From Lytechinus pictus (taxonomy: Eukaryota), in assembly GCF_037042905.1 (NCBI RefSeq), contig NC_087247.1:12896001-12960000 (forward strand): a DNA stretch of 64,000 nt. Direction: 5' to 3'. This document shows, piece after piece, positions 7,139 to 39,277 of this stretch. The notes beneath the pieces were generated by a model. The model saw only the letters and a program-made list of their open reading frames with translations. It searched no databases and was not told the DNA's origin. The first letter of the stretch is position 1. Every line of letters starts with the position of its first letter. The position numbers and the translations under genes were made by a program.

Positions 7139-7560
7139 CTACGGCATAGTGACTGGCCCCATAGTAGCTGCTGGTGGGGCAGGTGCTGCTGTTGTTGCCG
7201 GTGCTGCGGTAGTTGCCGGTGCTGCGGTAGTTGCAGGTGCTGCGGTAGTTGCAGGGGCTTGCGTAGCAGCTGGTGTGGCAGCCGCAGCTTCTTCACTGCT
7301 ACTGGCCGAGCTCGAACTCCCACTCCCACTCGATGACCGCCTGTCACGGTGTCGGCTGCGACGACCTGCAACGAAATAAAATTGCATTTGGAGTAAAGTG
7401 CAGATATCACTGGCAGACAAATTGAGGGGATGGGGCTTGAGGGCACTGGACCCCGTCCACAACCAAGAAAAATAACAGAAGAAGAAGAAAGGAAAAGAAA
7501 GAGGGTAACAGTGTTCTTAAAATATTGTCAAATTTAACACAAAATAAATGAATGTTCATT

Positions 7561-7602
<42 letters not shown>

Positions 7603-9397
7603 AGAAATGAGCGTGGAGTGGTGAATGAATCCAATAACTCGCAGCCCCGTCCATAACATTAGCGTATTTTCGTAATATCACTGACTACGCAGACACTTTC
7701 TACAAAGCACAATGGAGTCAGAGGCTTTGGTCGAAAGAAAATGGTCTGGGACAGCAGAACTTTGTCCGAAGGTTCAGACCGGACGAGAAATTGTAAATAT
7801 TATGTCCTTTTGTCCAGAATCGAGGGGTACACTGCTGTTTTGATTCACCGGTTTTTGAACAAACAATGAAGGGCTTTTGACAAATGATTCTCTGCCGTAT
7901 AGAAAGCGTCTGAGTAGTAATTGCAAAAAAATCCCTATTCTCAACCTCAGCGTCGGGCACTTTCTGCCACAAAAATGGTAGAGAGTGAGCTAATGAACCT
8001 TATGAAGAGGCACTGTATAGAAGATACGCCATACATAATATTTGTCATAAAACTCAGTGGCCCGTATTCTGAAGTCGGGTTTAACTTAAACTCTGGTTTA
8101 AAGTTGTGGTTTAAGTATGGGAAGCCAAAAGTATCAAATTTTTTATTAAGTTGTATCTTTCTTATGTTTACTGTGCTCTTTCCTGATTCATCAATGGTGA
8201 AGACAATCATCTATTTATACCTCCTACACAATTATGAATGATTTGAGAGCCGAATGAGCTGACGTATGATATCTCTACTGTTAGTGATTATGTAACAATT
8301 GGCTGTCCATACTCAAACCACAACTTTAAACCTGAGTTTAAGTTAAACCCGACTTCAGAATACGGACCAGTGGGGATAATCATGCCCCCCCCCCAAAAAA
8401 AAAAAAATCACGTAAGAAAATTGTTGTAAAACAGTTGTTGAGTGCCAATCCGATTTCGTGTACACACTTATGTTATCCGAACATTAAAGTGACACGTATC
8501 TTACACTAAACTTATATTATCACTTATCTGGTCATGATGTGGATGTGCCCATCGGGGCTGTTGTTTGACTAACACTCTATTTTTGCATTGTGATATCGAA
8601 TTATCCGATGATATCTTCTCTCATAAATCTTCTTTAATAAATCTTACTAGAAGTATTATAATAATTTACAGGATTCAAGATTTTTTTTGGTGATACATAC
8701 ATCAAGAAATAGTGAATAATTTGTTCGATTTTAGGTTGTACTGTTTTTCAATTAGACATATGTGTATGAATGTAAGAGAAAAGAATATATATTCCTTGAA
8801 AAATAATTATGGAATCAATCTGGTTAGAATAAAAATGTATATCAGATATTTTGAGAACAAATTGAATTGATTTATAATTCATGACATTGTTTTACTTCAT
8901 TTTCGTTAAGAATTGTCAAATGTATGGATGTGTTGATCATAATAATTGTACGTTCAAACCAAGCTTTGTAATTATGGTGTAATTTTTTATTTTTGAAATT
9001 TGATATCGCTTTTTAATTTATAATCATGAATGCAACATTTTACTATGTTCAATTTTGTTTGATGAGAGAAGAGAATAAAAAATTATTTTTAAAAAATATA
9101 TCAATTAAAAACAAAAAAAAATATCTGATTCTGACGACAATGAAAGAGTGAAAAAAGGATAATGTATGTGTTGATAAAATTTAAGAAGTAAAATTTTGAA
9201 TTAATAAATAGCAAATATATTTAAAAAAATAAGTAAATAAAGATATGAATGAATCAAATTATAAATAATTAGGTAAATAAATGAATGAATGAATAAAATA
9301 ATTCATAAATAATATCAGAATTCTTACATGTCTTACCTTCAACGGTGAGCATCATTGCACACAGCAGAACACACACAGTGAATAGCATTGGCTTCAT
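7139..9397 (-). CDS. Gene A: 95-aa secreted proprotein; signal peptide, RRSRHRDRR, Ser-rich SSSGSGSSSSASSSEE, (APATTA)n repeat
   Basis: Exon 9397-9337 (tag|ATGAAG..., MKPMLFTVCVLLCAMMLTVE/G, 61 nt, G|gtaaga) joined to exon 7365-7139 (gcag|GTCGTCGC..., ends CCG TAG); 288 nt in frame. Upstream non-coding exon donor AAAGAG|gtaggc at 9765. Confidence 0.85.
8059..8368. mobile_element. MITE, PIF/Harbinger-like, in the gene A intron
   Basis: About 60-bp TIRs ggcccgtattctgaagtcgggtttaacttaaactc ... gagtttaagttaaacccgacttcagaatacggacc, with 3-bp agt flanks on both sides. Confidence 0.85.
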
Positions 9398-10106
9398 CTA
9401 CAGATAAAGAAAACACAAATCAATTATTATTTTGTTTTAATTAATGTCGCATTCTTATGCAAAGAAGGGGAATTAATTTCTTAAGGCAGCTCAAAAAGTT
9501 ACCCTTAATAGGCCTATAGTGATGTCCTCAGTTCAGCAAGCTCAAAACATTTATTGAAATTTACCGAGTTATAATTACATAATAACAATATAACATCAAC
9601 AAAAATTACACACATTTGCTTTTATAGATATGTGGTATTTCTCCAAATAATTGGAAGACATGACTTCTGCGAAAAAAGGGGGCAGCCATTTTCTGATTAG
9701 TGAATCTACGTAGGCCTATATATAATTCTTTATTAAAAGTTACGAGATATAGCAAATAGCCTACCTCTTTGTCTTCAAGTTGTCAGTGTTAGGCCATGCT
9801 TATTTTTCGTACACAAACAGCCATGTGAACTCAGAGAATACTAAAACCAAATCACAATATGTGCTATTGCATGTCTAGATATTAGCCTAATGCATGTCTA
9901 TATACTAGATTATGAACAAAAGCTATATTTAACTTTCTTTCTTAATAAGATAAAAACCTAGGCCTATGCTTCATGTTATTTCGTTTTGATACGGACAAAC
10001 GGCAATCTTGTTAGCTGATTGTATAAAAAGTAGTATAGGTTATCATCAAACTCTGATAAATAGCAATGGATACTCTCTTTACTCCATTGAAATCGATATT
10101 GTAGAG

Positions 10107-11354
10107 CAGGGGTTCTCAATAGGTGGCGCGCGCGCCACTTGTGGCGCACCGAGCCTTGCGGAGTGGCGCTTGGGAGCCGGTATAAAAAATAAAGGAAAAA
10201 TAAGGGAGAAAAAATGTATCTACCAGTAACCTGGCAATAAGGTTTTGGTGATCATTTTAATACAAAGAGAAAACAAAAACTCTTTACTTGACACTTAATC
10301 GCTAATTGATTTCCCCAAATTTTGTCAAATTTAGCACTCGATAACCCCTATTATGGAGGATTGATGGTGTTCTCCTTTTTATTTATTCTACGCTGTACAA
10401 AGTTTTTGTGCCGCACAAGTGATTTGAAAACCCCGTTTGTAGGATTTCTATTTCAACGGCGAGAAATTTTGCATTTCCAGAGTATACGTTTTGGTTAAGA
10501 GTTAAACATCAAATGATATGATATTCAAAGAACACCCTGATCATAAAAGATTATGAATTTGGGACATAACAAGCAGAAACTTTGTTTCCGAAGCCGATTA
10601 AAATCCGATGTTGTAAAAATGAAATAAATGTATGCTCAGATGCATTGTCTGCCGTGATTGCCTGCATGCATTCTTGCTTAACATGAACTGAATGAATGAT
10701 ACTGCACGTGAGTTATAGAGAGAGAGGGGCAGTTGGGGCGTTAGTGCAGTGCAACGCCTAATTTTCAGCCCTTGCAAAATCGGGGAACGTAGCTTCAACC
10801 ACTGGCGTACAGATGGGGGTGGCGATTGGGGGGGCCAAATGTTTCATGGCCAAGAAAAAAAAGGAGAAAGGGAAAGAAAAGGAAAGGGAAAGAGTGGAAT
10901 ATTGTATTATTTTCTTAATATTATGTCAAAATATAGATATTTGTATTGCAATAAAGTTCAATATTTTTGCTTCAGCTGCCATATCTAGCCCCCTCATTTT
11001 TTTTTTTACTCATTACGCCACTTGCTTCAGCCAATATATCTGGGGCAGAACAGTCTGAACTAGTGGTATCATTGGTATGTTGTGAAAAATTCACTGGTCA
11101 TTTTTCTTTTAATATTGATATTGTGTAGTTTATTGGCATTTGTATTTCTTCTGTTGATATTAATTAGAGCCCCTCTGGGCAATTTAAAAGGCCTCATATT
11201 CCAAAACGTCTGGGGGCTCTGCCCCCTCGACCCCCACCAGGGGCCTCTGAACCCCCTCCGCTGATACATTGCTGATTTGCGCAATGGACAGTGGAGCATT
11301 GCAGATTCTCAACATGAAATGTGGCGCTTCAAAAAAAGTAATTGAGAATGGCTG
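10107..11354. mobile_element. Non-autonomous hAT (Charlie-like) element with a nested small insertion (about 10800-11025)
   Basis: caggggttctcaat ... attgagaatggctg termini and a perfect 8-bp TSD ttgtagag (10099-10106, 11355-11362). Confidence 0.85.
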
Positions 11355-12613
11355 TTGTAGAGCTTTAAAAGGTTATACACAATATCAAGCCAGTATAGAC
11401 TATTAAATAGCTCTGCCAATTATGTTTGCATATCGTACAAAGGAACTGAAATATTGCAGCCAGTAACAATCAAAAGCCTGCAGTGGCCCAAAAAATTGCG
11501 ATCGAAATTAGATCAACGACATTGAAGGCATAATTAGTCTAAAATAAATAGCGACGAAGAACGCTAATGCACTTTGAAGAACAAGATGAATCATTTAAAT
11601 AAAACATTTAAACTTAAATGTACATACTTTTGAAGAAATGTCAGGGCATCTTACTTTATTATACTACTGAGGTATACAATACCAGAATACAAACTGTTTA
11701 ATGGCGAAGATAAAAAATGTTGGGCAACTTACTTTGAAAGAGGTGATGTTTGGAACTGTCCGGATGAGAGAAAAAACCTTGAACAATCTCAGCAATGAAT
11801 ACTGCTTCACCTTGAAATCTTATTTTAAAATCTTTCCAAACTCGTAGCTGAATATATAGAGATATATTTTAATCCCCTCCTGGAGTAACGGGATGGGGAC
11901 CTGAATCATTTGCAGACTGTTGTCAAGTTCGTTTTATTTTTTCAGTTGCCTATCGGTAATCCCTTCACACAGGTGACGTCAAAATTCATGATTTTGGTAC
12001 TGAATAGTGTAATAAGTTAATTAACTTACATTGGTCATTGCGAATTCATAGTAATTAATTGTAATTAGCTCCCATTATGGCGGATATTTCCGAATACACA
12101 TACATATAGGTTAAGCCTGTGACTTGTGTTTCAATACTTAGATGTCAAGTCATAACGGATTCGGGGTATTTGATTGCTATTTCTTGATATTGCATGTATC
12201 TGACAAATATTGATCTTTGATTCGAGGTATATATTTTCCATGAAATACAACTGTCATTCTAATTTCAAGGGCGTAACAATAATTAGGATTAATAATCCAT
12301 TGGCTGTTGTCATTAATGGATCTCTGCGATGCACGCAAATAATTTGGCATCTTTGATACCCGCGAGCTGGCTTCGTCCCTACGAATCAGAATAGATGGGG
12401 GAGAGAGGGAGAGAGAGGTGGCGAGGGGACAGATGAAAGGGAAAAAAGAGGGAGGGAAGATAAAGAGAGGGAGAGAGGGGGGAGAGAAAACAAAGATGGG
12501 AGGGGGTAAAGCGAGAATGGGGGAGGAGGGAGAATGTATGCATATGCAATGTTTTTTTAAATGGAAGAGAGATGGGGATAGGAGTAGGGCAAGTAGGGAG
12601 GGTGAATTTGAAC

Positions 12614-13574
12614 GGGTCCGCTAGTCATAAGGACCACTAGTGATAACGTGTAAGTTCGCTATTCATAAAAGGGAAATGGGGTCACCAGTCATAAAGTCAT
12701 GAGGTCCGATATTCATAATGCAACATGAGGGCCACTATTCATAATCGAGCATAAGGGTCATTGATCATAAGGATCGCAAGGAGGGTCGGTGTTTATAATT
12801 CTAGATGAGAGTCGCTAGTCACAAAGAGGAAAAGAGTATATTGATCATATGGGTCGTTAGTTTCTGTTTGTTTCTGTTTGTGGTAACTCCCGTAGGAACT
12901 CGGCAGGACAGCATTTTGCTAGTAAACGCCAAGCTGGTATATAACCAATTACCTTGGAAACATTGTACATCTAGGTTAATCAGTCATAGTGGCTGACGCA
13001 ATAGACGACGAGATCACTCTTGGGCCTTTTTATCAAAGTGGAGACAATGGCAGAGTTGGGATTCGAACTCACAACCTTGCGATTATGAGTCCAATGCTCT
13101 AACCACTGGACCACACGACCCTTTAGTCATAATAGGAAAAGGGGTCGCCAGTCATAACAGGAAAAGGGGATCGTCAGTCATAAGAGTAAAAGAGGGTCGC
13201 TAGTCATAATAGTATAGAAGGGGTTCGCCAGTCATAAATGTAGAAGAGGGTCGTTAGTCATAATAGTAGAAGGGGTTCGCCAGTCATAATAGTAGCTGAG
13301 GGTCGCTAGTAATAATAGTAGAAGGGGTTTGCCAGTCAGAATAGTAGATGAGGATAGCTAGGTATAATAGTAGAAGGGGTTCGCTTGTGATAATAGTAGT
13401 AGGGGTTCGCCAGACATAATATATGAGGGTCGCTAGTCATTATAGTACGTAGAAGGGGTTCGCTAGTCGCTATTCTTTGATTATGACTAGCGACCTCTAC
13501 GAACATAGACCCGTATGAATAGCTACCCTTATGACTATTATGACTAGCGGTCCTTATGACTAGCGGTGGACCCC
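12614..13574. mobile_element. DNA element with TIRs and an internal ~27-bp tandem array, interrupted by a SINE
   Basis: gggtccgctagtcataaggacc vs ggtccttatgactagcggtggacccc; array of agtcataatagtagaaggggttcgc units at 13123-13470. Confidence 0.65.
12861..13121 (-). mobile_element. tRNA-derived SINE
   Basis: Head gggtcgtgtggtccagtggttagagcattggactcataatcgcaaggttgtgagttcgaatccc (A and B boxes), non-tRNA body, short caaacagaaa repeat tail. Confidence 0.75.
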
Positions 13575-13605
13575 ATTTGAACTGTGACTTGAAGAGAGGG
13601 GAGGC

Positions 13606-14249
13606 CCGGGGGGGGGGCCACTTACATTGACGAGTGGATACCATGCGCGACCAAAAAAACACGTAAAAAGGATGTCTTTTTCAAGATAGGGCACGTTACG
13701 TACGTAACGTGATAAGGGTGTCAAAAACACAAAAATATTGAAAAAAGGGTATCTATTTCGCTCGGAAAAATATACGTGTTTAGGGTCAAATATGCGGGGA
13801 TTATAAAACAATATCAAAATGTTTTATAAAGGATGTCCTTTTTGCCCCAACAGTACGTGTTTAGAGTCCGATTTGCGCGAGGTGTGGAAGGTGGGGCCGT
13901 ACTAAACCATAATAATGGTGTGTAAAGGTAAAACCGACGACCGACGGACCCGTGACAACAATAAAACATCGCTGTACTCGTTTAGGGGTTCATTTCAGGG
14001 AATACTTGTCAAGAGTATCATTTCGTTTCAGAATATGGAAAATACATCGCTGTACTTGTTTAGGGGCTCAATATTGGGAATACTTGCCAATAGTATTTGT
14101 TTCCAATACTTGTTAAGGGTATAGTTTCACACGCCAATACTTGTTAAGGGGTGCATTTTCAGAATATGGAAAATACATGTTTAGGGTGCTTTTCAAGACC
14201 CCGTGGTCGCGCATGGTATCCACTCGTCAATGGAAGTGGCCCCTCCGGG
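13606..14249. mobile_element. MITE family, copy 1 (ggggccacttacattgacgagtggataccatgcgcgacc TIR)
   Basis: About 45-bp TIRs; homologous copies at 26574-27063 and 31599-31712 (truncated). Confidence 0.85.
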
Positions 14250-15308
14250 AGGGGAGGTAGGTCTGTAACTGATGGACTATTTGAGTTCAAACGACATGGC
14301 TATCTGCAATAATATTTTGGGACAGAGAATACCCATCTCACAAGAATAGCAACCGCATTAGTTTGAGATATGCTTCGAAGGAATTCCTTTACTCCGTGGA
14401 TGTGACGCGATATATAGCTAACGATAAATGAAAAATCAATTATACTTTATCTCGCTCATCACTATATCATGAAGAATCATGAATATTTATCAAAGAGATT
14501 TAGTATTTAAGATAGGTTAGTTACTTTTTCGCGTCTGGAATTTACGAAACACTTTTCGATTTAACGGCGCTAATTCAACAAGCAAGTTTAACGTCGACCT
14601 CCTCAAAAATAGTTTTGTTTTGACATATCGTGTCAGAGTATGCGTGATGAGGTAGGCTTGATGAATCTAGATGTCGACAGGTTGCCAAAGTTTTCTAGCC
14701 CAACAGGAGGCAGGTGATGACAGTTGTGCATTGTCCGAGCTAAAGGACCGCATGCATTTCCATGGATTTTCAAAATTATCTGGCTCTCTTTCGAAATATT
14801 AATTGGTGTTTCCCAAGTGGGGAAAACCCGTCAACCGTACCTGTTTTTCAAGCATTTCCACAGTGTTTTTATCTGCTCATGGCAGCGAAAGTTCGTGATG
14901 ATGTTATAGTCATACAAATCCAGTGGAAATGTCGTGTAGGCCCTACTAGAGTCCTCAGCGTAGACAGATATGAGCATAGTGTTGTTGTTATTGTAACCAA
15001 AAAAAATATCATTATTAAAGGCAGAATGAATTTTCCACATGTCCACAATTACCACAAAATGAAACATTCTCAACGATCAGTTACCCTTCACATAAACAGA
15101 AAAACCATACCACAAACAAATCGTGGACCTGTATAACTTTTCAGGGATGAATGACTAGATGGATAAGTAATATGTTTTGATGTAGGATAAAAGGGTTATT
15201 CCAGTAAATAATTTCTTTGTAAATCGATTATAATGCATGAAATACCACAACTGCAAAGTGAATTCGATCAATCAATAATGAAGATATTGAAAGATAATAA
15301 AAACGAAC

Positions 15309-16083
15309 CTATGCAGTTTCTTCCGTCTCCTTGGTAACCCTGATTGCATCTACATTGGTAAGAACTAGGAATGTTGATACATGTAGCCAATGAGTGACAG
15401 TTGGAGGTACCAGTAGAGCACTCGTTGATATCTAGTATGGAAAAATGGAAATGATATTCGAGAGATAAAACAGAGGCTTTCCTCAATGTCACATCTTCGA
15501 TCCACTTTTCTTTTCTTATATAAAATGGTTGCAGTGAACATTGTGCTATGACAAAATAATGAAGAAAATAAAGTCGAATGTGATGTATGTCGTCCTAAAG
15601 AATAAATGAGCAATATTGTGTTTTCTGGCTATTCAATTTGTAAATATCTCTGATTAATTTTGATCACATCAATTATATAACTTGCCACCAACAACATAAA
15701 TTTGTGACAAGATTTGTTAATCATCATGTTATGTAGCAACTGCCTTTCGAGATATATGTTTTAAAGCGAACTCATTTTCTATGTAAGACGCCTTACAATT
15801 ATAGTTGAAATATTTGTATGTACATGTATTTAACCATGGACCTACTATAGGTTTTCCATGATTTAACTTACTTATATTTTAGCAATGATAGATTATTATT
15901 ATGTATTTTAGCACGTAGTAGAAGCTCTGTAGGGGGAAGTCATTAACATGATTAACCTACCTCTACATGTTCTTCCATTTCCTTGGTAACCCTGATTACA
16001 TCTACATTGGTAGGAACCGGGTGTATTGATACATGTCGCCGATGGGTGGCAGTTGGACATACCCCGGATGCACTCGTTGATAT
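15309..16083 (-). CDS. Two further Ca-binding EGF exons; parent transcript unresolved
   Basis: 16083-15961 (DINECIRGMSNCHPSATCINTPGSYQCRCNQGYQGNGRTCR) and 15431-15309 ([41 protein letters not shown]); each 123 nt, phase 1/1, intact AG/GT, six Cys. Confidence 0.75.
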
Positions 16084-18427: not shown

Positions 18428-20508
18428 CTACGGCACTGGTGGTGTAGCTGTCGCTGCTGGCGTAGTGGCAACAATTGGATTTCCAGCGTCCGCTCCAGTT
18501 CCGGTACCGGCTCCTGCACCGGTGCCTGTGCCAGTACCGGTCCCTGCTTGTGGTGGTGTAGCTGTCGCTGCTGGCGTAGTGGCAACAATTGGATTTCCAG
18601 CGTCCGCTCCAGTTCCGGTACCGGCTCCTGCACCGGTGCCTGTGCCAGTCCCTGTACCGGTACCTGTGCCAGTACCGGTCCCTGTACCGGTACCGGTACC
18701 AGTACCAGTACCAGTTCCCGTTCCTGTACCCGTACCTGTTTCTGTCTCGGTGCTTTCTTCGCTACTGCTCGAACTACTTGACCGCTTGTGTCGCCGGCCT
18801 AGAAGAAATAGATGAAAAATTTGTTTCATTTTTAAAATAGTGATATTTTCATGTTTTTAGCAAAACTACATGTCTAATAAAGGACTGAAAAATAGGTGGA
18901 AAGATCGGCGTATAATCTAGGGAATCTACAGTCCTATTCCAAGATTACATCTTTTTCTTTTGAAACAATTTCAATTTCCTTTTCTTTTTCTTATAGGGCC
19001 TACTATTGATGCTACAAATTGTTGCAGGAATACCTGGCAAATGCCAAGAAAATTAATGCTTGCCTATCATTATTTTTTTAAACAGTCATTGATATAAATA
19101 ATGTTATTTTATCCACTCAAGGTTATAAAGGTGGTGCAATCAACAAGATCAGCCTTTCAGCAGCCCCTTTCATATTCATCTTATTTTCATAACTTTATAC
19201 TTTGTACAATGCATTCTGTATAATCATAAATTATATTGTTCGAAATTCAAATAAATGTAACGAGGAAAATGATTTTCTTTGTTCAAATTTAAATTCAAAT
19301 TTGGTTTAATTCCAGCAGAACAGAAAATTTATTACAAATTGATTTCATACATTTGTAAATTACATTCAATGATTTAAGTGATAATTAAAATGGTATGAAA
19401 TTTATTCAACATTACACTTTAAAAAAATGAATGAAAATTATATTGGTGATGTATCTTCGATTCGTCAGATGGTTATCTCCGACTCAGTTTGGAAACGATT
19501 AAAAACTATTGAAATGAAATGAACCCATTTCTGTTATTTCTAATTTGTAAAGGTGTGTCAACAGTTTTTTCAAGTGTGAAAGAAACCAGGGTGAATCCAG
19601 AAACCACGAAAAAATTCTGAAAATCGTGGACAGAAAAAGATGGAAGTTAAATAAAGGTCCTAAATCAATAATACACACAAAGGGGTTCAATTAAAATTTC
19701 TCAATGACTTTTTAATGGCGTAGGGGACGTGCATTCTGTGATCCTCCAATATATAGATATGCCTATGAGCTTGAAAATGTTTATAATTATTTTAGGGTAA
19801 GATTTCAATCTTACCCTATCTTATATCAATTTCAATCGACAATTTTCAAAGCACTTCCTTGTTATCACACAAAAAATGACACTGCAGATACATTACATTT
19901 TAAAGCGATTTTACGATTTTCATGCCGAGTCCGTAAGGAGATCGCATGGTGGCCTTACGATCTCCGTACAACGGTTTGCCTGCATGTCTACCAAAATTTA
20001 CGATCACTGTCGTATGATTATTACCGCCTCTCCATGGTGTCATAACGATGATAATGCACTGTCATCTACGATAAGGCTACGAGCTGATACCGTGGAGGCC
20101 ACGATGCCGCCGGAGTGTCAGTTTAAAAAAAGAAGATTTTAATGCGCAACTTTTTGCAACGATAACGGCAGCGAGGAAAAAGTTAACATCTTTTCACTCA
20201 AATTTAGAGTTATTTGAATATTCACCATCGAAATCACACAAGAATGATGTCTTGGTTGTATTTCTGAAAATTAGTGTTTCATCTGTTATCGTTATGGCTT
20301 ACTCACTTTTTGTGGAAAATTTCAAATTAAGAGTTTAAAACGATGCATAATCAGAAAGGAATCAATGTTTTTTTTTTTTCTCATTTGAACGTGATGGTAA
20401 ATACTCTGAAGAAAGTAAAATTCACTACGTTGTATGAACATTCTTACCTTCGACGGTTATCAGCATTACACAGAGCAAGACGCACAGGGTGATCATCATT
20501 GGCTTCAT
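18428..20508 (-). CDS. Gene B: 143-aa secreted proprotein, paralog of A; signal peptide, [19 protein letters not shown], (TG)n and a duplicated 38-aa unit
   Basis: Exon 20508-20448 (cag|ATGAAG..., [21 protein letters not shown], 61 nt, G|gtaaga) joined to exon 18798-18428 (ctag|GCCGGCGA..., ends CCG TAG); 432 nt in frame. AATAAA on the minus strand at about 18278-18283. Confidence 0.85.
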
Positions 20509-20544
20509 CTGAAAAAAAGAAATATGATAAATTTAATGAGAAGT

Positions 20545-20619
<75 letters not shown>

Positions 20620-20677
20620 GTAAATGTAAACATGCATCCACTCTTTAACATGACTACTGTGTCTTGTACCAAATACT

Positions 20678-21088: not shown

Positions 21089-21092
<4 letters not shown>
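20678..21092. mobile_element. Near-perfect palindromic insertion with an internally duplicated hairpin; Penelope-like fragment with hammerhead-like motifs
   Basis: Outer arms taggcgaaaaaatgacaagacg...cgtcttgtcattttttcgccta; four copies (two per strand) of cc(t/a)tgaagaaggcctaaggccgaaag(c/a)tcgg; lies between (TA)n tracts. Confidence 0.6.
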
Positions 21093-29374: not shown

Positions 29375-30410
29375 ATGATCCATGGATGTTCGAAGATCGC
29401 ATTGCTTTTCCTTTGCTTTTTCTTTTCATCGGCCGAGGACAGAAGACATCATCCTATTTTGGATGGTAAGAAATCGCAAGTGGTTTCATACAACAAGCTT
29501 AAAAAGTTAAAAAGGTTGAAAAGAAAATATTGTAATGATTATGTTTCTAGTTTAGAGATGGGTAATTAATCATTGAGGGGTAGCCTTGTGAAGAAAGAAG
29601 GTGAAAGAAAAGGAGTAGAAGAAGAAGAAAAAAAGAAAAAAAAGAACAAGAAAAAGAAGAAGAAGAAGAAAAAGAAGAAGGAGGGGAGGATAACTGAATA
29701 GATTACATAATGAGTGAACATGATGATCCACTTTACTATGAGTTTATTTCATGAATTGATCGTCATAAATCATTAAGTTACACATGATCTAAGTAAGGGT
29801 GTAACATTGAGAGAGATCGTGTTAAATCCAATTCTTCGTAAATATCTTTACCCCAACAGAAACTTCAATTGAGCGACAACGTGGAGTCATTTCCTCATCA
29901 ACAAGTACATCTGGGGAGAAAATATCTCACTCCACAGAGATTGTGGTCAGGACTTGTATTACACGTTCTACCGTAACAACTGCTACAACAAAAGCAACAA
30001 CTGCATCAACACCCGGGACAACTGCAACTCCAATAGCAACTTCGAACGGAGAAGCAACAACGCCTTTAACTGTCATGTCAACAATCCAGAGGATAGCAAC
30101 TGCAGCTTTAGCAACATCCAGAGTAAAAAGCACTTCAGTTGCAACTGTTGCAACACCGCTCCCCACGACCAGGATATCGACCGCACCCACCACCACCACC
30201 CAAGCAACTCAGACGCAGCAGACAACAACACGACCGACAACTCCAACCATGGGCATCGTAACGACAACGGCGATTTCACCTACACAGACGCGATCTCAAA
30301 CAGCACAGGTAGCGACAACAACCACCACCACCACCGCAGCAACAACCACGCTAGTAACTACCACAAGAACAAGAGCAGGGACGACCATCCGACGGGGTGA
30401 TTTGGGATAA
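29375..30410 (+). CDS. Gene C: 213-aa secreted Thr-rich mucin-like protein
   Basis: Exon 29366-29465 (ATG at 29375; MIHGCSKIALLFLCFFFSSAEDRRHHPILD, G|gtaag) joined to exon 29860-30410 (cag|AAACTT..., ETSIERQRGVISSSTSTSGEK...TTATTKATTAST...RRGDLG*); 642 nt in frame. Upstream donor CAG|gtaaga at 28574. Confidence 0.75.
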
Positions 30411-31598: not shown

Positions 31599-31712
31599 CC
31601 CGGGGGGGCCACTTACATTGACGAGTGGATACCATGCGCGACCAAGAAAACACGTAAAAAGGATGTCTTTTTTCAAGATAGGGCACGTTACGTACGTAAC
31701 GTGATAAGGGTG
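31599..31712. mobile_element. Truncated MITE family, copy 3
   Basis: Matches the left end of 13606-14249. Confidence 0.75.
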
Positions 31713-32289
31713 CCAAATGAGATTCAACGAATTATTTTTACTTCCCCTTATTTTGTCAAGTTTGACGGTATTAGGTGTGCACACGAGTATCGTCTGCCAA
31801 ATGTGACACGGGAGGATGAGGATATATCTTGTTTACAAATAAAAGTGTACTAAGGTCAAGGTCGCCGTGAACACGGACCACAGCCATGTGATGAGCAAAT
31901 TACATTTTGAAATATGAAAGAGCATTGAAAAGGGATTTCCTCTGTTTACACCGTAAGTGTTTTTTTTCTTCAGGTTATGATGTACCGCGCTAGTTGTTAC
32001 CATGGTTACGGTAGCGAGTTACTCCGAACTACATTATTTTTTAAAGGATGTTTTTATTGTATTCTCTCAAATCAAAATACATATTCACATTCCATAAACA
32101 AGTTGTACAAATTATTTGAAACATGATTATAAATTATACAATAAATCCATATCCCATATAATTATACAAATTATACATCAAACTTCAAAGATACTGGAAA
32201 TTAATACTGATGCGTTTCAACAATTACAAAATGAAATATTACTATCATTATTATTTTCATTTTTTGAACAAGTTCACATCTAGTTACCT

Positions 32290-32398
32290 AGTTAATGCTT
32301 ATAGCATTTCCATTTATTTGAAAGCAGGGTAAAAGAGCATTGTAGATTAAATGCCCCGCTCACGGGCATAGCTGCCGCGGCCGGGGATCGAACCCCTG
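32290..32398 (-). mobile_element. SINE fragment
   Basis: B box gggttcgatcccc followed by a gcccgtgagcggggcatttaatc SINE-body motif. Confidence 0.5.
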
Positions 32399-32891
32399 AT
32401 TATTAATCATGTTAATCGATTGACTCCGGCGTTTTGTTGCACAACTGGAACCAAACAACCCTTTTGCAGGAGGCAACGGGTTAAAAGAGATTTGTCTCTG
32501 CATTGCTAGCCATGTATCCGTTGTTATGTCTAAATATCTAAAAGCATATCAGTTATCCTCGTTACCCGAACTGCCAATTTCAGATGCAGTACTTGGCCTC
32601 ATTTTTCCACCATTATATTGCATTTCAGCTACCATTGCTACACGAGCACATGAACATTGAATTGCCATTCGAAGTATCGGAAAGGAAGATGTTTAAAAAG
32701 TAGGTACAAAAATGCCAAACTGAGCATTATATACATGGGAGATTGTATGAGGTATATGAGAAATCTTATCATTCGATGTAAAATATGTAGATCTTGTGTC
32801 TAACTTTTTCCATTTTCAATAATAGATTATTTTTATTTGAAAACATTGAAGCCTTTCGTGTCTAAGTTGTCAATTTTAAATTAGTAGTGAT

Positions 32892-33900
32892 NNNNNNNNN
32901 NNNNNNNNNNNNNNNNNNNNNNNNNNNNNNNNNNNNNNNNNNNNNNNNNNNNNNNNNNNNNNNNNNNNNNNNNNNNNNNNNNNNNNNNNNNNNNNNNNNN
33001 NNNNNNNNNNNNNNNNNNNNNNNNNNNNNNNNNNNNNNNNNNNNNNNNNNNNNNNNNNNNATGATAATGACGACGATGATGATAATGATGGTGAGACATG
33101 ATTATGACGTTGTTGTTAATGATTATGATGGTGATAGTGATGATGATGAAAACGATGATGATGATGATGATGATGAAGAAGATGACGACGACGATGATGG
33201 TGATGATGATGAATGATGTTGATGATGATGATGATTATGATGCTGATGATGACGACGACGATAATTTTTATTTTTCTATCTATCTATCTATCTAGTTACC
33301 TATCTGTTTATCTATCTATTCATCTATCAATCTACCTACATGTTTGTCTGACTGTCTGTCTGTCTGTCTATCTATCTTTCTGTCGACTCATTACATCTAT
33401 TAATCTATCTATCTACCTATTATCTATCTATCTATCTACATACCTATCTATCTTCTTATCTATATCTATCTAATTATCTATCTATCCATCCATCCATCCA
33501 TCCATCCATCCATCCATCCATCCATCTATCTATCTATCTATCTATATGTTTGTCTGTCTGACTGTCTGTCTGTGACAGTCTTGTCTATCTATCTTTCTGT
33601 CGACTCATTACATCTATTAATCTATCTATCTACCTATTATCTATCTATCTATCTACATACCTATCTATCTTCTTANNNNNNNNNNNNNNNNNNNNNNNNN
33701 NNNNNNNNNNNNNNNNNNNNNNNNNNNNNNNNNNNNNNNNNNNNNNNNNNNNNNNNNNNNNNNNNNNNNNNNNNNNNNNNNNNNNNNNNNNNNNNNNNNN
33801 NNNNNNNNNNNNNNNNNNNNNNNNNNNNNNNNNNNNNNNNNNNNNNNNNNNNNNNNNNCTGTCTGTGACAGTCTTGTCTATCTATCTTTCTGTCGACTCA
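32892..33900. repeat. (GAT)n and (TCTA/TCCA)n microsatellites flanked by two assembly gaps
   Basis: N runs at 32892-33060 and 33676-33858; GAT/GAC tract 33061-33260; TCTA/TCCA tract 33277-33675. Confidence 0.95.
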
Positions 33901-36168
33901 TTACATGTATTTCTATCCACACTTTGAATACATAAGGGGTGGAATCAGTGGAAAACAACCAAGGAATACATTATATTTTTTAAGGTTTATTTGTCGAGAA
34001 TTGAAAAACTATTTCATATCTTTTCTAAAGAAAATGATATTTTGATTTTATCCAAATTACTCATACAAATGATTATGCATATAGAAAACTCTATCGATTC
34101 CTATAATATAAAAGAAAATTGCTGTGATGGTGTACTTAATTGGAGACAGCTGCAACATATAGCGTTCTGTATGGGTTAAATTAGCAAATCTTAAATTATC
34201 ATAGCAGATTTAGCTCCTTTCCGAATGAAAACTCAATTTCTTTCATTATTATGAAAATATAATGTGATAATATCAGTGTATATTATACACTTTTAAATAA
34301 AGGTGGACAAAGAGAATAGGTAATCCTCGTTAACAAATCAAACTTCAGGGACAATCCAAAAGGAGCAATTCTGTCCCGTTTCAAGGTATATATCAAGGCA
34401 AAATTTGAAGAAAAATGTAAATTTGATAAAAATGGATTAAGCTTCGGCCGTTTGGAATGAATCCCTTCACATTCTCACCCACTGGCGTACAGATGTGGGG
34501 GCTTGGGGGCTCTTCCCCTCCCTGCCCCCCCCCCCCCCCAAAAAAAATCATGACCAAGAAATTAAAGGAGAAAGGAAAGAAATGGAAAGGGAAAGGGATT
34601 GTGATATTATTTTCTGAATATTATGTCAAAATCTATCACAAACTTAGAGTTTTGTATATAATAAAAATGCGATACGCCGTATCGAGCCCCCTCAAAATTT
34701 CTGGCTCATTATGACACTGTTCTCACCTGTATGTCTCCTTGTCAAAGGGACTGGATTCTTTTGGCAAAATTTCAATACTTCGTTTCACCGGTTAATGTAA
34801 TAATAGTTATACAATCGACTCTGCAGGTACATTACATTTACCGGAATACTTTATTTAGTAATATGATTAAATATTGCTATTATATCGTTACAAACGAAAT
34901 AGAATTCGCTTCTTCAAAGTAAATCCTACGATTATTGAAGTAGCAACGTTGTCAGGTGTTTTGGTAACAGGTTACATTGTTTTAATGCCTAAGCTTTAAT
35001 TTATTTGATCAGTTGATACATTATTCTGAATTTCTGGTAATTAACTATCAATTTGCAAAGTTCATTACAACATTATATTGGATTGAACAAGTTTTATAAA
35101 TTAAAGTGCGGACAGGTAGAATTCGGACTTCATGGTGCCTTATTATATGTTAAATTCAAAGATCGTATTAGCCGTGTATACAAGTGACTTATTAGATTAG
35201 ATTAATGACCAACTATCATAAGTAATTCTTTCACAAATAAGTGAAATATAAAACAACATTGAATTGAATTCTCTTTATCACCTATGGTTTAGACAGGTAG
35301 ATTCAGAAACTTGACATATCATCAAAAGTAATCAAATTAATGTGTTTGATTCATTACAAATAATATCATACTTCGCATTTTCTATCATCCTGATATGATA
35401 TAAATATGAGTTTTAGAGTAGTTGAATTCATTCGATAAGATATTTTGCCGAATTTTTTGTTCTTTACTGCAGTTATTGTTTGTGAATTTTCAGCTCTGTG
35501 AAAGTACATCAACAAGGTTAGTGCTATACGAATAAACCTTTTCTTCTCCCTTCCCTTAAAAAGATGCTATAGACTTTACCATGTTTACGTTTGCTATTCC
35601 TATGTTTTAGTATCTGCATCATTCCCTCTTTTTAATTTGTTTTTACATTTGTCTACTTTTATTTTTAAAATATGATTTACACACAAAACTGGTAGGATAA
35701 AATTTGTGTAAATGCAAAAACTATATTTTCAAACTATCATCAGTATAGCTTCATAAGCCAAGCGATTGAAGGGGCCCAAGCACGGCGCATGCGGACAAAA
35801 TTTCGACCGAGCGAACGAATGCTTTGGTCTTTTTTAAAATGAAACTCTAAATTAGTGATAGATTTCAACATGATCTTAAAATGATATCATATTTCACCCT
35901 TTCCTCTGCTTCCCCTCCGTTTTCTTTTTCTTCCTTGGACCTGGAATTTTTGGGGAGGGGCAGTGCACCAAAGCCCCCGCCCCCTCTTCCTTCTGTATGT
36001 CAGGGATTAGCTATAGGCCAAAGCTTTCAGCAATTTGACGCCAAAGTCCCATGGTATAAGGTTTGATTAGCTGTCTGCTACCCCATCTTTGAATGTATAT
36101 TTTGCATTTACAATGGTTATATCCGACATTTATCATATTTTTTTTCAACCGATTGTTTTTTCTTTCAG

Positions 36169-39100
36169 ATGAAGGTCGCTATCGTTGCCACTATCCTCAT
36201 CAGCATCTCCATCGCACTTCATTCATCAGGTGAGATCATTTTGAAAAGTCGCCCCAAATATAGGGGTCGTTTCACGAAGCATTTGTCACTGCCGTTATCA
36301 GCTACTGAAACCCTACGATCTGATTAGCTAATAACAATTTGTTATTGACGAAGTGCTTCATGAAAGGCTCGACTTTTTGCAAAGGCTATGATTTCGACGT
36401 AGGTCAACGGCTAGTACGGGTGGAATACTTAGCTTTGATTAGCTGATTGAATGTCTGACTTTGTGAACTTTCACAAGTTCGCCGATTGACAAGTTGCCAT
36501 TGGTTAAAAGAAACTAATGATAATGATAGAGGCACATGGAATCCATATGAACAAAACATAATATGTATCATATATAATTTGAAGAAAAGAGCAATGTTTT
36601 CTATGTAGCAATGTTTTCCCGGCGCGGTGTTTTGCCAGGAGCCCCGCATTTAGCCTTGTGCACCTTCGTGGATTTAGGGGCAAACTGGGCTCTAACCCCC
36701 CCCCCCCCCACCCCCTTCATCCCTTCCTATTTAGCCCCCGAGATGGGGGTAGACTGGCATTAGGTTAGGAAATTTGTTTGCATCCTTCGATGTTTGCTTT
36801 GGAAAGTTCCCGTTATCTAACATGGACAAAACTGGACTGTCCTCAGGGTTATGTATAAAAATAATATGCGGTACACTCCCCCCCCCCCTTATAGTGCCAC
36901 TTTTGGAAACGACATAGTGCCATTTATTTCCTCTACACAGACAAGAAGCAAATATTGATTGTGTCAACGAAAAAAAAAATTAATAATAATGTTTCAGTGC
37001 GATCTTATAGTGCCACTTTTTGGAAACGACATAGTGCCATTTATTTCCTCTACACAGACAAGAAGCAAATATTGATTGTGTCAACGAAAAAAAAATAATA
37101 ATGTTTCAGTGCGATCTTTGAGGTAAGACGTAAGTAATTATTATCACTATCTTGTGATTTATACCTTCCAGCCAACCCCATTGATTTGGGATGCAGTATC
37201 GCGAGGAACGTCGTCGAGTGCTATCTCTCGCAGCTCTGCCCTCACTTCAAGCCTGAGGACATCCTCGACTGCGACAAGGAGCTGATGACGAGCACGATGC
37301 CGGTGGTCAACGACTACATGGTATCCCATTATCTTAGGGAAGCGCACAAAGATAAATTCTGTGACGGTGACGGTCAGCGGTTCGGATCAGCCTGCGCCGT
37401 GCTCGATCACGTTTGCTTAGGGAGGGATACATTTGACATCGATTATTGCGGAGGTGAGTCACTAATGTAGTGATTATTAATGGATAGATGGAATGATTAA
37501 CTGACTGATTGACTGACTGAATGATTGGTTGATAGATGGATGGTTCATGATTTTTGCCTCGTCATAAAAACATAACAATGGACTTCATAAAACCAATGGG
37601 CTTGAAGAGGATAACCCACAAAAGCTCATAAGCCAATCTCTAGTGGGAACAATATGGTCGGCATGGGCAGGAGTTATTACAGGGGCCATGGGCGACATTC
37701 ATGCTATTTTCTTTCAAGTGATTAAAAAAGAGAAAACGCAGAGAAAAATAAAAGATAGGGGAAGAAGAGTTTTCCATGAGGAAATAAGAGGGGAATGGTG
37801 ATAGAGAGGAATGCACCTGAATGAAAACCATTCTCTCTTTTTTTTCCGTTGATGATCAGATGATGCCAATTAATTTGCCTGTCCCGTGAAAGTGCCACTG
37901 CTATATTGCACCTGGGATTTAGTGCCGGTGTCCCATGCGCTTCATTAAAATGACTTCTTTTTTTTAAATCTAAGATTGTCAAGATTGCTATTTTCAGAGA
38001 ATTTATTGCGCTCCAACACGCATGCATGTAATTATGTTAAAAAAAAATCTTCTTCAAAAGAAATAGAAAATAGATTATTTATTTATTCTTTTTAAAAAAT
38101 AAAGAAAGAAAATGAACCGATGATTACATTTTGTTTGTTGCTCTCTGATCGAGCAGGCTTATTAGGATTTATGAATGTACATACCAAGTATAAACTAATA
38201 TCCCAACTGCTTTTAATGGATATAATTGTGTTTATCATTCAAATTAGTCGTAGACATTCTGCGGAAATCCTCTTTAAAAAGTTTTAAAAGGGCGAGTTTT
38301 TTTTCTTGGTATGATCGTGATGGTCGTCCTATTTCAGAAGATGTATTCTTTCCTGATTTCATTTTTGTGCTTTCCCCTAGCTGGTGCAATACCGGGGAGC
38401 GTTTCATGGAACGCCTTGTCCGAATGTTACTGTAGAAACTGCACTTCCCAGCCAATCAGAATCAAGTAAAGTTGTCAGATCTTACAACTTGTCAGATTAC
38501 AAATTTAGATGAAAGGGTCCCCCGGACCCTGCAAGAGCAATGAGTCTAGAAACATCATCACTTTATTATGATGATTATTATATCTTATCAGTCTGATATT
38601 TTGTCCCCCCCCCCCTCACTTCTTTATTCTTTTTGGAGTCCAACAATTGGACCTCTGATGTAAGTCGTCAAACATTTAAGGATTAATTGCAGTTTGGATT
38701 TTTTTTTTAGATTGTCAGAGTAAATGCAAGTTATGCTTGCACCACAATTACTTTATCTTTATTTTGTTTTTGTTTTTTATTAGAAACAAATCAACGATTT
38801 CGCCGCAGCGGCTCCTTCTCTGGTAGTCATTCTGGCTCACACTCGGGTCTCGTACATGTAATATATAAACAACCTGCAACCAAACCACCAACAGCCAAGC
38901 CCGAGGTAACAGAGAAGGCAACAACAGAAACTGATTGTGACACATCTGATGAAGATGCAACCACCGCAGCTACAACATCAGCTGCCACTACAACCCCAAC
39001 ACCCACAACACCAACGACACCTACCACTCCGACAACACCCACAACACCAACTACACCTACAACACCAACGACACCTACCACTCCGACAACACCAACTACA

Positions 39101-39277
39101 CCTACCACACCAACTACACCTACCACACCGACGACTCCGACTACACCAACTACTCCTACGACACCAACTACTCCTACGACACCCACTACACCTACGACAC
39201 CTACCACTCCTACAACACCAACCACACCTACAACACCGACCACACCAACAACTCCGCCGACTGAGCCAACAACATAG
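36169..39277 (+). CDS. Gene D: 278-aa secreted protein; signal peptide, 8-Cys domain, RFRR site, SGSFSGSHSGSHSG, long (TTP)n tail
   Basis: Exons 36169-36229 (cag|ATGAAG, MKVAIVATILISISIALHSS, 61 nt, G|gtgag), 37172-37453 (282 nt, phase 1/1) and 38784-39277 (ETNQRFRRSGS...TTPTTP...TEPTT*); 837 nt in frame. Upstream non-coding exon donor CAAG|gttagt at 35516. Confidence 0.88.
36888..37117. repeat. ~117-bp tandem duplication in a gene D intron
   Basis: ttatagtgccacttttggaaacgacatagtgcc...tgtttcagtgcgatct occurs twice, nearly identical. Confidence 0.9.

What the first reader, a model, noticed from the sequence alone, without database searches (positions are those of the whole stretch)
7139..39277. 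Four-gene cluster of secreted proproteins: convertase site, phospho-Ser block, variable Thr repeat (casein/SCPP-like logic in an invertebrate)
Seen: A, B (minus) and C, D (plus) each have a non-coding first exon, a phase-1 signal-peptide exon and a terminal exon reading basic site, then Ser block, then repeat. A: RHRDRR|SSSGSGSSSSASSSEE-(APATTA)n. B: RRHKR|[14 protein letters not shown]-(TG)n. C: ERQR-GVISSSTSTSGE, then Thr-rich. D: RFRR|SGSFSGSHSGSHSG, then (TTP)n. Established: R-X-K/R-R is the furin consensus (met in A, B, D; only a partial basic site in C), S-x-E/pS is the Fam20C motif, and SSSEE is the casein phosphate centre that stabilises amorphous mineral nanoclusters. Inference: cleavage exposes an N-terminal phosphoserine head on an O-glycosylated bottle-brush tail. 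This would be a modular family of mineral-binding or coating peptides (skeleton, tooth, adhesive or mucus), convergent with vertebrate SCPPs, whose introns are phase 0 rather than phase 1. I do not recognise this family, and such short low-complexity genes are easily missed by annotation.
Basis: partly seen in the sequence, partly recalled or inferred. Interest (0 to 1): 0.8.

Follow-up and report, generated by a model that had tools for sequence, protein, structure and literature searches.

The report
Sea urchin secreted phosphoprotein-like gene cluster
A cluster of at least five small genes in the painted sea urchin encodes secreted proteins with a protease-cutting site, a casein-like serine/acid block and a threonine-rich tail; one member is made only by the skeleton-building cells, so the family probably helps build the calcite skeleton, which remains untested.

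Summary
The genome is Lytechinus pictus. Gene A is a real three-exon mRNA: contigs from two independent studies join a non-coding exon, the phase-1 signal exon and the terminal exon at GT..AG sites. B is its paralogue by tandem duplication. D is conserved in another urchin (dN/dS about 0.12) but carries an extra 6-8-cysteine exon that the finding omitted. C has no support and fits worst: no furin site, a basic tail, no RNA run listed.

A fifth member, E, lies about 18 kb left of the window. It combines D's cysteine exon with an A/B-type terminal exon (RQRR, then DDSSSSEE, then a Thr/Pro tail). NCBI annotates it as "uncharacterized" (LOC129256533). A 2026 paper lists its L. variegatus orthologue as specific to skeletogenic cells and dependent on VEGF. 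Fam20C is a marker of the same cells.

The mineral-matrix reading is therefore supported for E, plausible for A and B, and weak for C and D. Cleavage, phosphorylation and glycosylation are all untested. A, C and D are absent from the protein collections searched.

Verdict: a new, lineage-restricted member of a known kind, the repetitive acidic secreted matrix proteins. The scan has not reported this on other DNA.

The parts
11733..11826 (-). Gene A exon 1, non-coding (5' UTR). No ATG inside. A TATATAT box lies about 30 nt upstream of the contig start.
   Evidence: contig piece 11733-11826 in X13, joint 9397|11733 with GT..AG on the minus strand
9337..9397 (-). Gene A exon 2, 61 nt. It begins exactly at ATGAAG and encodes the 20-residue signal peptide MKPMLFTVCVLLCAMMLTVE plus 1 nt (phase 1).
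6562..7365 (-). Gene A terminal exon. CDS is 7139-7365: G-RRSRHRDRR, then SSSGSGSSSSASSSEE, then (APATTA)n. The 3' UTR runs to about 6560-6620 (contig ends).
   Evidence: (contigs cover 6750-7363 with 0 differences and extend 129-188 nt further)
20448..20508 (-). Gene B signal exon, 61 nt, phase 1 ([20 protein letters not shown]). It is 78-80% identical in DNA to A's exon, differing by about 6 synonymous and 6-7 conservative hydrophobic changes by eye.
18428..18798 (-). Gene B terminal-exon CDS: G-RRHKR, then [14 protein letters not shown], then (TG)n, then two copies of a 38-residue unit (a perfect 114-nt duplication).
   Evidence: no RNA evidence obtained
29375..29465 (+). Gene C candidate signal exon, 91 nt coding, phase 1. 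Unlike A, B, D and E, the ATG is not at the exon start.
   Evidence: unverified
29860..30410 (+). Gene C candidate terminal-exon CDS: ETSIERQR, then GVISSSTSTSGE, then a Thr-rich (36%) basic tail ending RRGDLG. There is no furin consensus.
   Evidence: no homologue and no run listed
36169..36229 (+). Gene D signal exon, 61 nt, begins at ATGAAG, phase 1. It is 84% identical to the orthologous exon in L006.
37172..37453 (+). Gene D cysteine-rich exon, 282 nt, phase 1-1, 8 Cys. Six of the Cys are invariant in D, E and a paralogue on contig C20. dN/dS is 0.126 against L006.
38784..39277 (+). Gene D terminal-exon CDS: ETNQRFRR, then SGSFSGSHSGSHSG, then a linker with DCDTSDED, then (TTP)n. dN/dS of the non-repeat part is 0.122 against L006.
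32892..33060 (.). Assembly gap 1 (169 N). It is intergenic and abuts an (ATG)n array.
33676..33858 (.). Assembly gap 2 (183 N), at the end of a (TCTA)n array. About 48 nt on its two sides are copies of each other.

Best explanation
This is an echinoid-restricted tandem cluster of small secreted-protein genes on Lytechinus pictus contig C3. The order is E, A, B on the minus strand and C, D on the plus strand.

A, B, D and E share one gene plan:
- a non-coding exon 1;
- an exon 2 of 61-64 nt that starts exactly at ATGAAG, encodes the signal peptide and ends in phase 1;
- an optional symmetric (phase 1-1) exon for a 6-Cys domain, kept in D and E and absent in A and B;
- a terminal exon that opens with R-x-K/R-R, continues with a Ser-rich block (acidic in A, B and E) and ends in a fast-changing Thr/Pro/Ala/Gly tail.

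Shown:
- A is spliced and expressed.
- D and E are under purifying selection, including the basic site and the Ser block.
- E's orthologue is specific to skeletogenic cells and depends on VEGF.

Inferred: in the secretory pathway of skeletogenic cells, Fam20C phosphorylates the S-x-E/S-x-pS runs. The tail is O-glycosylated. A furin-type convertase cuts after the basic site. That cut would free an acidic phospho-glyco peptide from a 5-9-residue basic stub (A, B) or from the Cys domain (D, E). The peptide would then bind Ca2+ or amorphous carbonate, or be occluded in the spicule matrix.
For: - Gene models and motifs.
- RNA joints for A in two studies.
- A/B paralogy, with only two copies in the genome.
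- Gene E matches XP_063953913.1 exactly, and the L. variegatus orthologue has the same three coding exons.
- E dN/dS is 0.14, with 0 non-synonymous changes across the 24 codons GNRQRR...EDEDTP.
- D's orthologue has the same three exons, unalignable introns and dN/dS about 0.12 at dS about 0.9.
- Six invariant Cys in D, E and the C20 paralogue.
- The motif combination is absent from shuffles.
- E's orthologue is PMC-enriched and falls with axitinib: PMC13200730.
- Fam20c is PMC-enriched and an Alx1 target, and Fam20 genes are in this genome.
- Sea urchin skeletal matrices contain casein-kinase-type phosphoproteins and a FAM20C-like protein: PMC2830187.
Against: - No direct evidence exists for cleavage, phosphorylation or glycosylation of any member.
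- A had zero depth in two raw RNA-seq runs of the species. Its expressing tissue is unknown because the runs are coded.
- Nothing at about 65.06-65.12 Mb of L. variegatus NC_054742.1, where A-D orthologues should lie, appears in that paper's differential-expression lists. The LOC and gene-model numbers next to E's that I searched are not among its PMC markers.
- D's Ser block lacks S-x-E. C has a basic tail and no convertase site.
- A convertase removing only 5-9 residues, as in A and B, is unusual.
- A and B may share their 5' exons with an EGF-repeat gene.
Confidence: 0.55

Rival explanations
1. These are general extracellular-matrix mucin or proteoglycan core proteins, not mineral binders. 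The Ser-Gly runs (A: SSSGSGSS; D: SGSFSGSHSGSHSG) would carry glycosaminoglycan chains and the Thr/Pro tails mucin-type glycans. The products would hydrate or coat cell surfaces or the blastocoel matrix. Any skeletal link would be indirect.
For: - D's block has no S-x-E, but it does have repeated Ser-Gly next to acidic residues.
- D's tail is 47% Thr and 23% Pro.
- The PMC-enriched lists in PMC13200730 include sulfate transporters, a heparan-sulfate sulfotransferase, galactosyltransferases and mucin-like proteins.
Against: - A, B and E carry canonical SSSEE/SSSSEE runs that need no GAG explanation.
- E's block is invariant between two species.
- E is co-expressed with Fam20c.
Confidence: 0.25
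2. The 'family' is partly an illusion. Only A/B and D/E/F are true paralogue pairs or groups. C is not a gene, or is an unrelated one. The shared phase-1 signal exon and low-complexity tails reflect the commonest plan of secreted proteins, not common descent or function.
For: - A and B are alignable only over the signal exon.
- D against E scores only E = 0.014.
- C has no homologue, no RNA run, a different exon start, a basic tail and no furin site.
- Other frames of the C region are open too.
Against: - E joins the two groups in one protein: it has the Cys exon and an A/B-type RQRR-DDSSSSEE exon.
- In A, B, D and E exon 2 starts exactly at ATGAAG and is 61-64 nt long.
- All five genes lie within about 60 kb.
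- The motif combination is absent from shuffles.
Confidence: 0.3
3. A and B are not independent genes. They would be short isoforms, made by an alternative last exon and intronic polyadenylation, of an EGF-repeat gene that uses the same signal exon. This does not exclude the main explanation.
For: - The A and B units are an 11.1-kb tandem duplication in which only the signal exon (78%) and a calcium-binding EGF exon (87.6%) stay alignable, at the same offset.
- Four phase 1-1 cbEGF exons lie on the same strand downstream of A and B.
- No other phase-1 signal exon was found upstream of them.
- L. variegatus has a 673-residue EGF-repeat gene ending just upstream of E on the same strand.
Against: - In both runs that express A, a single contig covers the signal exon and it joins only to A's terminal exon.
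- E, the annotated member, is a stand-alone gene.
Confidence: 0.3
4. These are precursors of bioactive or antimicrobial peptides released at the basic sites.
For: The signal peptide is conserved while the mature part diverges fast. Basic processing sites are present.
Against: - The released parts are anionic low-complexity Ser/Thr/Pro/Ala/Gly stretches with no amphipathic or cationic core.
- The short basic stubs are not conserved between A and B.
- There is no amidation signal and no repeated peptide copies.
Confidence: 0.05

Closest known systems
Vertebrate SCPP (secretory calcium-binding phosphoprotein) genes: caseins, enamel proteins and the acidic SIBLINGs
   Same: Tandem cluster of small, fast-evolving secreted proteins. 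Exon 1 is non-coding and exon 2 encodes the signal peptide (shown for A; implied for E by the L. variegatus gene model). S-x-E runs lie near the start of the mature chain (A, B, E). Tails are low-complexity and likely glycosylated. Fam20C is expressed in the producing cells.
   Different: Introns are phase 1, not phase 0 (tested). There is no sequence similarity, and this is an echinoid, not a vertebrate SPARCL1-linked locus. A convertase site precedes the Ser block. Two members carry a Cys domain. This is analogy, not membership.
Sea urchin skeletal phosphoproteins (phosphodontin, P16/UTMP16, P19)
   Same: Secreted or membrane acidic Ser-rich proteins of sea urchin mineralising cells. P16 and P19L appear in the same table as E's orthologue as PMC-enriched, axitinib-sensitive genes. 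Phosphorylation of matrix proteins at casein-kinase-type sites has been shown for this group.
   Different: They are different loci and genes (different LOC ids). Phosphodontin has 35 repeats and an Asp-rich C-terminus. From my own knowledge, P16 has a transmembrane segment. None is described with a convertase site plus Thr/Pro tail or with the 6-Cys exon.
Sea urchin spicule matrix proteins (SM30/SM50 family)
   Same: Clustered, duplicated, PMC-specific genes that join a folded domain to repetitive, rapidly evolving low-complexity regions (PMC5460417).
   Different: SM proteins carry a C-type lectin domain and Pro/Gly/Asn-rich repeats. Here Pfam finds no domain and the repeats are Thr/Pro/Ala/Gly with a phospho-type Ser block.
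Kazal / follistatin-type domains (as in SPARC, hevin, testican)
   Same: The C-terminal half of the D, E and F domain has Cys spacing C-10-C-6-C-10/12-C. A strand-helix-strand is predicted there. Kazal families are the nearest rows in the language-model search (score 0.81). Kazal-type entries recur as weak local or shape matches (1y1c and 7kbu; TM 0.38).
   Different: No Pfam hit even at E <= 10. No PDB profile hit. No fold match reaches significance. Treat this as a lead only.
Serglycin-type small proteoglycan cores and mucin-domain proteins
   Same: Short secreted proteins encoded by few exons, with Ser-Gly runs (A, D) and Thr/Pro tracts.
   Different: No homology. A, B and E have SSSEE-type acidic runs rather than pure (SG)n. 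GAG attachment is untested.

Membership tests
Vertebrate SCPP family | All introns in phase 0 | tested here: not met
   The signal exons of A, B, C, D and E end in phase 1. The Cys exons are phase 1-1.
Vertebrate SCPP family | Non-coding exon 1, signal peptide in exon 2 | tested here: met
   For A, RNA contigs show it. For E's orthologue, the gene starts about 1 kb upstream of the ATG exon. It is untested for B, C and D.
Vertebrate SCPP family | S-x-E phosphorylation motif encoded just after the signal peptide | tested here: inconclusive
   Present in A (SSSEE), B ([14 protein letters not shown]) and E (SSSSEESSSQEDED). D has none in its Ser block and C's is weak.
Vertebrate SCPP family | Descent from SPARCL1 / location in the SCPP locus | not testable with these tools
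   This is an echinoid genome with no sequence similarity. A profile of the Cys domain finds no SPARC or hevin chain in the PDB.
Furin-type proprotein convertase substrates | R-x-K/R-R motif in a secretory protein | tested here: met
   A has RDRR, B RHKR, D RFRR (conserved in L006) and E RQRR (conserved in L. variegatus). C has only ERQR.
Furin-type proprotein convertase substrates | Actual cleavage after the motif | not testable with these tools
   This needs N-terminal sequencing or mass spectrometry of the secreted products.
Fam20C (Golgi casein kinase) substrates | S-x-E/pS motifs in a protein that enters the secretory pathway | tested here: met
   A, B and E meet it. The signal peptides have hydrophobic cores scoring at least 3.0.
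Fam20C (Golgi casein kinase) substrates | Kinase present and co-expressed | tested here: met
   Pfam Fam20C hits lie at three loci of this genome. Fam20c and E's orthologue are both PMC markers in L. variegatus. Co-expression is not known for A-D.
Fam20C (Golgi casein kinase) substrates | Phosphoserines observed | not testable with these tools
   No phosphoproteome was searched against these sequences.
Sea urchin PMC biomineralisation effector genes | PMC-enriched expression and dependence on VEGF signalling | tested here: inconclusive
   Met for E's orthologue (Table 3 and supplements of PMC13200730). Nothing at the expected place of A-D orthologues in L. variegatus is in those lists, and they may not be annotated there.
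Kazal domain (PF00050/PF07648) | Profile match above threshold | tested here: not met
   No Pfam hit at E <= 10 for any of five domain sequences.
Kazal domain (PF00050/PF07648) | Kazal fold | tested here: inconclusive
   The model has pLDDT 64.5. Only weak local matches to Kazal-type chains were found and nothing is significant.
Mucin-type domain | Long Thr/Ser/Pro-rich tandem repeats with synonymous codon variation | tested here: met
   D has (TTP)n with an 18/36-nt period, 14 copies and 82% matches, and its tail is 47% Thr and 23% Pro. A has (APATTA)n at 4.5 copies. Glycosylation itself is untested.

The most novel reading that the evidence does not exclude
This could be an echinoid parallel to the vertebrate SPARCL1-to-SCPP story. 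A secreted protein with a (possibly Kazal/follistatin-like) Cys domain and an acidic Ser/Thr tail duplicated in tandem. Some copies lost the symmetric phase-1 Cys exon. The result was casein-like phosphoserine/mucin peptides (A, B). These would be the long-sought Fam20C substrates of skeletogenic cells and would control amorphous calcium carbonate handling in the urchin skeleton.
Probability: 0.15. Interest if true: 0.75.

Novelty: new member of a known kind. Interest (0 to 1): 0.5.

Why it matters
Fam20C is a direct Alx1 target in sea urchin skeletogenic cells, but the papers read here name none of its substrates there. This cluster supplies concrete candidates with casein-type SSSEE runs. 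One of them has already been measured as PMC-specific and VEGF-dependent. Several are invisible to current annotation and so are missing from single-cell and proteomic analyses.

L. pictus is, to my knowledge, amenable to CRISPR, so deleting the cluster, or E alone, is a direct test.

The family also shows a folded domain being dropped through a symmetric exon, leaving a pure low-complexity secreted peptide. The same route is proposed for the vertebrate SCPPs.

Tried and rejected
- **Protein searches.** The terminal exons of A and C found nothing. A local phmmer control shows identical sequences would have scored E = 4.5e-28 and 4e-84, so these proteins are truly absent from the collection.
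- **Exhaustive search with D's Cys exon.** It found one fragment cluster only.
- **Domain and structure searches.** Pfam found nothing for any exon. A PDB profile search gave only a chance row. The single-sequence model was poor. The five-sequence model reached pLDDT 64.5. Foldseek PDB and Swiss-Prot, VIA-align wide and the atlas shape search gave nothing significant.
- **RNA for C.** No run was listed.
- **RNA for A.** Raw RNA runs X14 and X15 had zero depth on A.
- **More family members.** DNA and protein searches of the whole genome with the A signal exon and the E terminal exon found no further copies.
- **Records and neighbours.** The L. pictus record around E is withheld. The ENA contig holding a third-species copy of D's Cys exon had no DNA. 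Looking in the PMC13200730 supplements for neighbours of E's orthologue at 65.06-65.12 Mb found none.
- **Other papers.** No paper mentions the run or analysis accessions. The spicule proteome paper mentions no Kazal, mucin or furin.
- **Readings considered and dropped.** Sp185/333-type immune genes, centrocin/strongylocin-type antimicrobial peptides and neuropeptide precursors were dropped. The composition is anionic and low-complexity, and the gene plan differs. This rests on my own knowledge and was not tested.
- **Downstream of the C20 paralogue.** The 1.46 kb after its Cys exon holds no Ser-block exon.

Full report
**What is in the sequence.**
- A (CDS 7139-7365, minus): G-RRSRHRDRR, then SSSGSGSSSSASSSEE, then (APATTA)n.
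- B (18428-18798, minus): G-RRHKR, then [14 protein letters not shown], then (TG)n.
- C (29860-30410, plus): ETSIERQR, then GVISSSTSTSGE, then a Thr-rich stretch.
- D (38784-39277, plus): ETNQRFRR, then SGSFSGSHSGSHSG, then (TTP)n.

Each has an upstream exon that encodes a hydrophobic signal peptide and ends in phase 1 at a strong donor: A 9337-9397, B 20448-20508, C 29375-29465, D 36169-36229.

The pattern is not chance. A furin consensus followed within 20 residues by SSS[D/E][D/E] occurs three times in 184 kb read in six frames, and never in 100 local shuffles.

**RNA evidence.** Two independent studies of the same species (runs X1 and X13) each hold one contig that:
- covers 6750-7363 without a single difference;
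- joins 7363|9335 (the cut fits two places further right, giving exon ends 7365 and 9337);
- joins 9397|11733, both joints with GT..AG on the minus strand.

One of them continues over 11733-11826. Exon 1 holds no ATG and sits about 30 nt downstream of a TATATAT box.

Two raw RNA-seq runs from a third study had zero depth on A, so expression is conditional. Run names are coded, so the tissue is unknown. No run was listed for C. I had no further read-laying runs for B, C or D.

**Organism and annotation.** The genome carries a Bindin gene (E = 1.5e-67). One of the proteins found is named by NCBI as Lytechinus pictus. The A and C proteins are absent from a 5.8-billion-protein collection, although an identical entry would have scored E = 4.5e-28 and 4e-84. 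D's cysteine exon finds only fragment ORFs from other samples.

**The family is larger and more structured than described.**
- *A and B.* They are paralogues. Their signal exons are 78-80% identical in DNA and differ by synonymous and hydrophobic-to-hydrophobic changes. They are the only two copies in the genome. They sit in an 11.1-kb tandem duplication.
- *D.* It has an extra exon (37172-37453, phase 1-1) encoding a cysteine-rich domain. The same reader noted this exon separately (s1-317737).
- *D's orthologue.* A 1.9-kb genomic contig from another urchin (L006) carries the same three coding exons at 84%, 80% and 76% identity, with unalignable introns. dN/dS is 0.126 for the Cys exon and 0.122 for the start of the terminal exon, at dS about 0.9. 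ETNQRFRRSGSFSGS is unchanged.
- *Gene E.* Scanning 60 kb on each side revealed a fifth gene about 18-20 kb left of the window on the minus strand. It has a 64-nt signal exon, a 297-nt phase 1-1 exon with six Cys, and a terminal exon reading G-NRQRR, then DDSSSSEESSSQEDED, then TPITTTTTAPATATTPRTPVPNP.
- *E links the two groups.* It combines D's architecture with an A/B-type terminal exon.
- *The Cys domain.* The domains of D, E and a paralogue on contig C20 align with six invariant cysteines.
- *Shared exon 2.* In A, B, D and E exon 2 starts exactly at ATGAAG and is 61-64 nt long. C does not share this.

**Gene E is known only as a name.** My model equals XP_063953913.1, "uncharacterized protein LOC129256533 [Lytechinus pictus]". 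The L. variegatus orthologue, LOC121411681, is 95% identical and has the same exons. dN/dS is 0.14. The 24 codons from GNRQRR to EDEDTP carry two synonymous and no non-synonymous changes, while the Thr tail differs by a six-residue indel.

**Expression of E's orthologue.** A 2026 Development paper (PMC13200730) lists LOC121411681 (S. purpuratus LOC115919110) as "Uncharacterized" among PMC-enriched mRNAs that fall specifically under the VEGFR inhibitor axitinib (PMC = primary mesenchyme, the skeletogenic cell). It sits beside P16, P19L, p58a and several metalloproteases. From the supplements:
- log2 fold change -2.68, adjusted p = 1.7e-12;
- single-cell marker log2FC 7.3, detected in 51% of PMCs against 1% of other cells.

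The Fam20c orthologue is a PMC marker in the same list. A review describes it as a direct Alx1 target (PMC7719703). Fam20 kinase genes are present at three loci in this genome. Sea urchin skeletal matrices are known to hold casein-kinase-type phosphoproteins and a FAM20C-like protein (PMC2830187).

**Most likely mechanism.**
- *Shown:* the proteins have signal peptides; A is expressed; D and E are constrained, including the basic site and the Ser block; E is made by skeletogenic cells that also express the S-x-E kinase.
- *Inferred:* Fam20C phosphorylates the Ser runs of A, B and E. The Thr/Pro tails are O-glycosylated. A furin-type convertase cuts after R-x-K/R-R. The acidic phospho-glyco peptide binds calcium or amorphous carbonate, or is occluded in the matrix.

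In D and E the cut would separate the Cys domain from the tail. In A and B, which lack the symmetric Cys exon, it would remove only a 5-9-residue basic stub. That is unusual and may simply be a leftover of the ancestral architecture.

**What does not fit.**
- D's block has no S-x-E. It reads like Ser-Gly glycosaminoglycan attachment sites.
- C has a basic tail (pI about 11.9), no convertase consensus, a different exon 2, no homologue and no RNA support. It may be unrelated or not a gene.
- Nothing at the expected position of A-D orthologues appears in the L. variegatus differential-expression lists, and the gene numbers I searched next to E's are not among its PMC markers. They may be unannotated there too.
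- Four calcium-binding EGF exons lie on the same strand downstream of A and B. One was co-duplicated with the signal exon at the same 11.1-kb offset. I found no other signal exon for them. L. variegatus annotates a 673-residue EGF-repeat gene ending just upstream of E. A and B may therefore share 5' exons with an EGF-repeat transcript. In the two runs that express A, only the A junction was seen.

**Assembly gaps.** The gaps at 32892-33060 and 33676-33858 lie in (ATG)n and (TCTA)n arrays between C's stop codon (30410) and D's exons (from about 35.5 kb). The two sides of the second gap repeat each other. No claimed exon or reading frame touches either gap.

**Comparison with known systems.**
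- The family works like the vertebrate SCPPs in gene plan and in having S-x-E near the mature N-terminus. It fails SCPP membership on intron phase, and homology could not be tested.
- Its nearest functional neighbours are the urchin's own acidic matrix phosphoproteins (phosphodontin, P16, P19) and the repetitive, clustered SM proteins.
- The Cys domain has no Pfam, PDB or significant fold match. A Kazal-like reading recurs only as a weak lead.

**Verdict.** This is a real, lineage-restricted gene family of A, B, D and E, with C doubtful. It is a new member of the well-known kind of fast-evolving acidic secreted matrix proteins. One member already has a documented skeletogenic expression domain. 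The biochemical claims remain inference.

Noticed in passing
window 2805-2912, 4225-4332, 15313-15420, 15965-16072 (minus strand): Four phase 1-1 calcium-binding EGF exons (DINEC...) lie downstream of A and B. The exon at 4213-4438 is 87.6% identical to the one at 15301-15520, at the same 11.1-kb offset as the A/B signal exons, so signal exon and EGF exon were duplicated as one unit. L. variegatus annotates a 673-residue EGF-repeat gene here, ending just upstream of E.
   Followed up: partly
G000:C3 about 12875551-12877509 (L012:627-923, L012:1446-1509, L018:9551-9684), 18-20 kb left of the window: Gene E, the fifth cluster member (LOC129256533, annotated 'uncharacterized'). Its L. variegatus orthologue is specific to skeletogenic cells and dependent on VEGF.
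   Followed up: yes
L004:1464-1745 (G000:C20, minus strand): A paralogue of the 6-Cys exon on another chromosome (phase 1-1; ...GQRFESACEVLDNIC...). No Ser-block exon lies in the 1.46 kb downstream. A further weak hit with stop codons lies on C10 (L005).
   Followed up: partly
window 7944-8540: A very high-copy repeat inside A's second intron. Summed contig depth reaches tens of thousands, with many variant letters and loose ends in all four runs.
   Followed up: no
window 10000-11500: A transcribed multi-copy element inside A's first intron. Raw RNA runs give depth 20-45, almost all with the first mate on the + strand, and many variant positions. Part of it (10844-10935) recurs at 34548-34635, upstream of D.
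   Followed up: no
window 18437-18649: A perfect 114-nt tandem duplication (1.9 copies, 100% match) inside B's terminal exon. It is either a very recent expansion or an assembly effect.
   Followed up: no
window 30390-30407: C's predicted protein ends in RRGDLG and so contains an RGD tripeptide. This could be chance.
   Followed up: no
window 33561-33610 and 33859-33905: About 48 nt before and after the second assembly gap are copies of each other. This suggests the gap is an unresolved repeat rather than missing unique sequence.
   Followed up: partly
window 12020-12090: A dense run of TAAT/ATTA homeodomain-type sites (for example TAATTACAATTAATTA and TTAATTAA) lies 200-260 nt upstream of A's start. 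The region is AT-rich, so this may be chance. It was not tested against Alx1 site models.
   Followed up: no
runs X4-X12 (organism B): Nine small runs of a second species, from three studies, hold 4-9% of the sampled 31-letter words of A's terminal exon and 3' UTR. This is compatible with an expressed orthologue about 90% identical.
   Followed up: no
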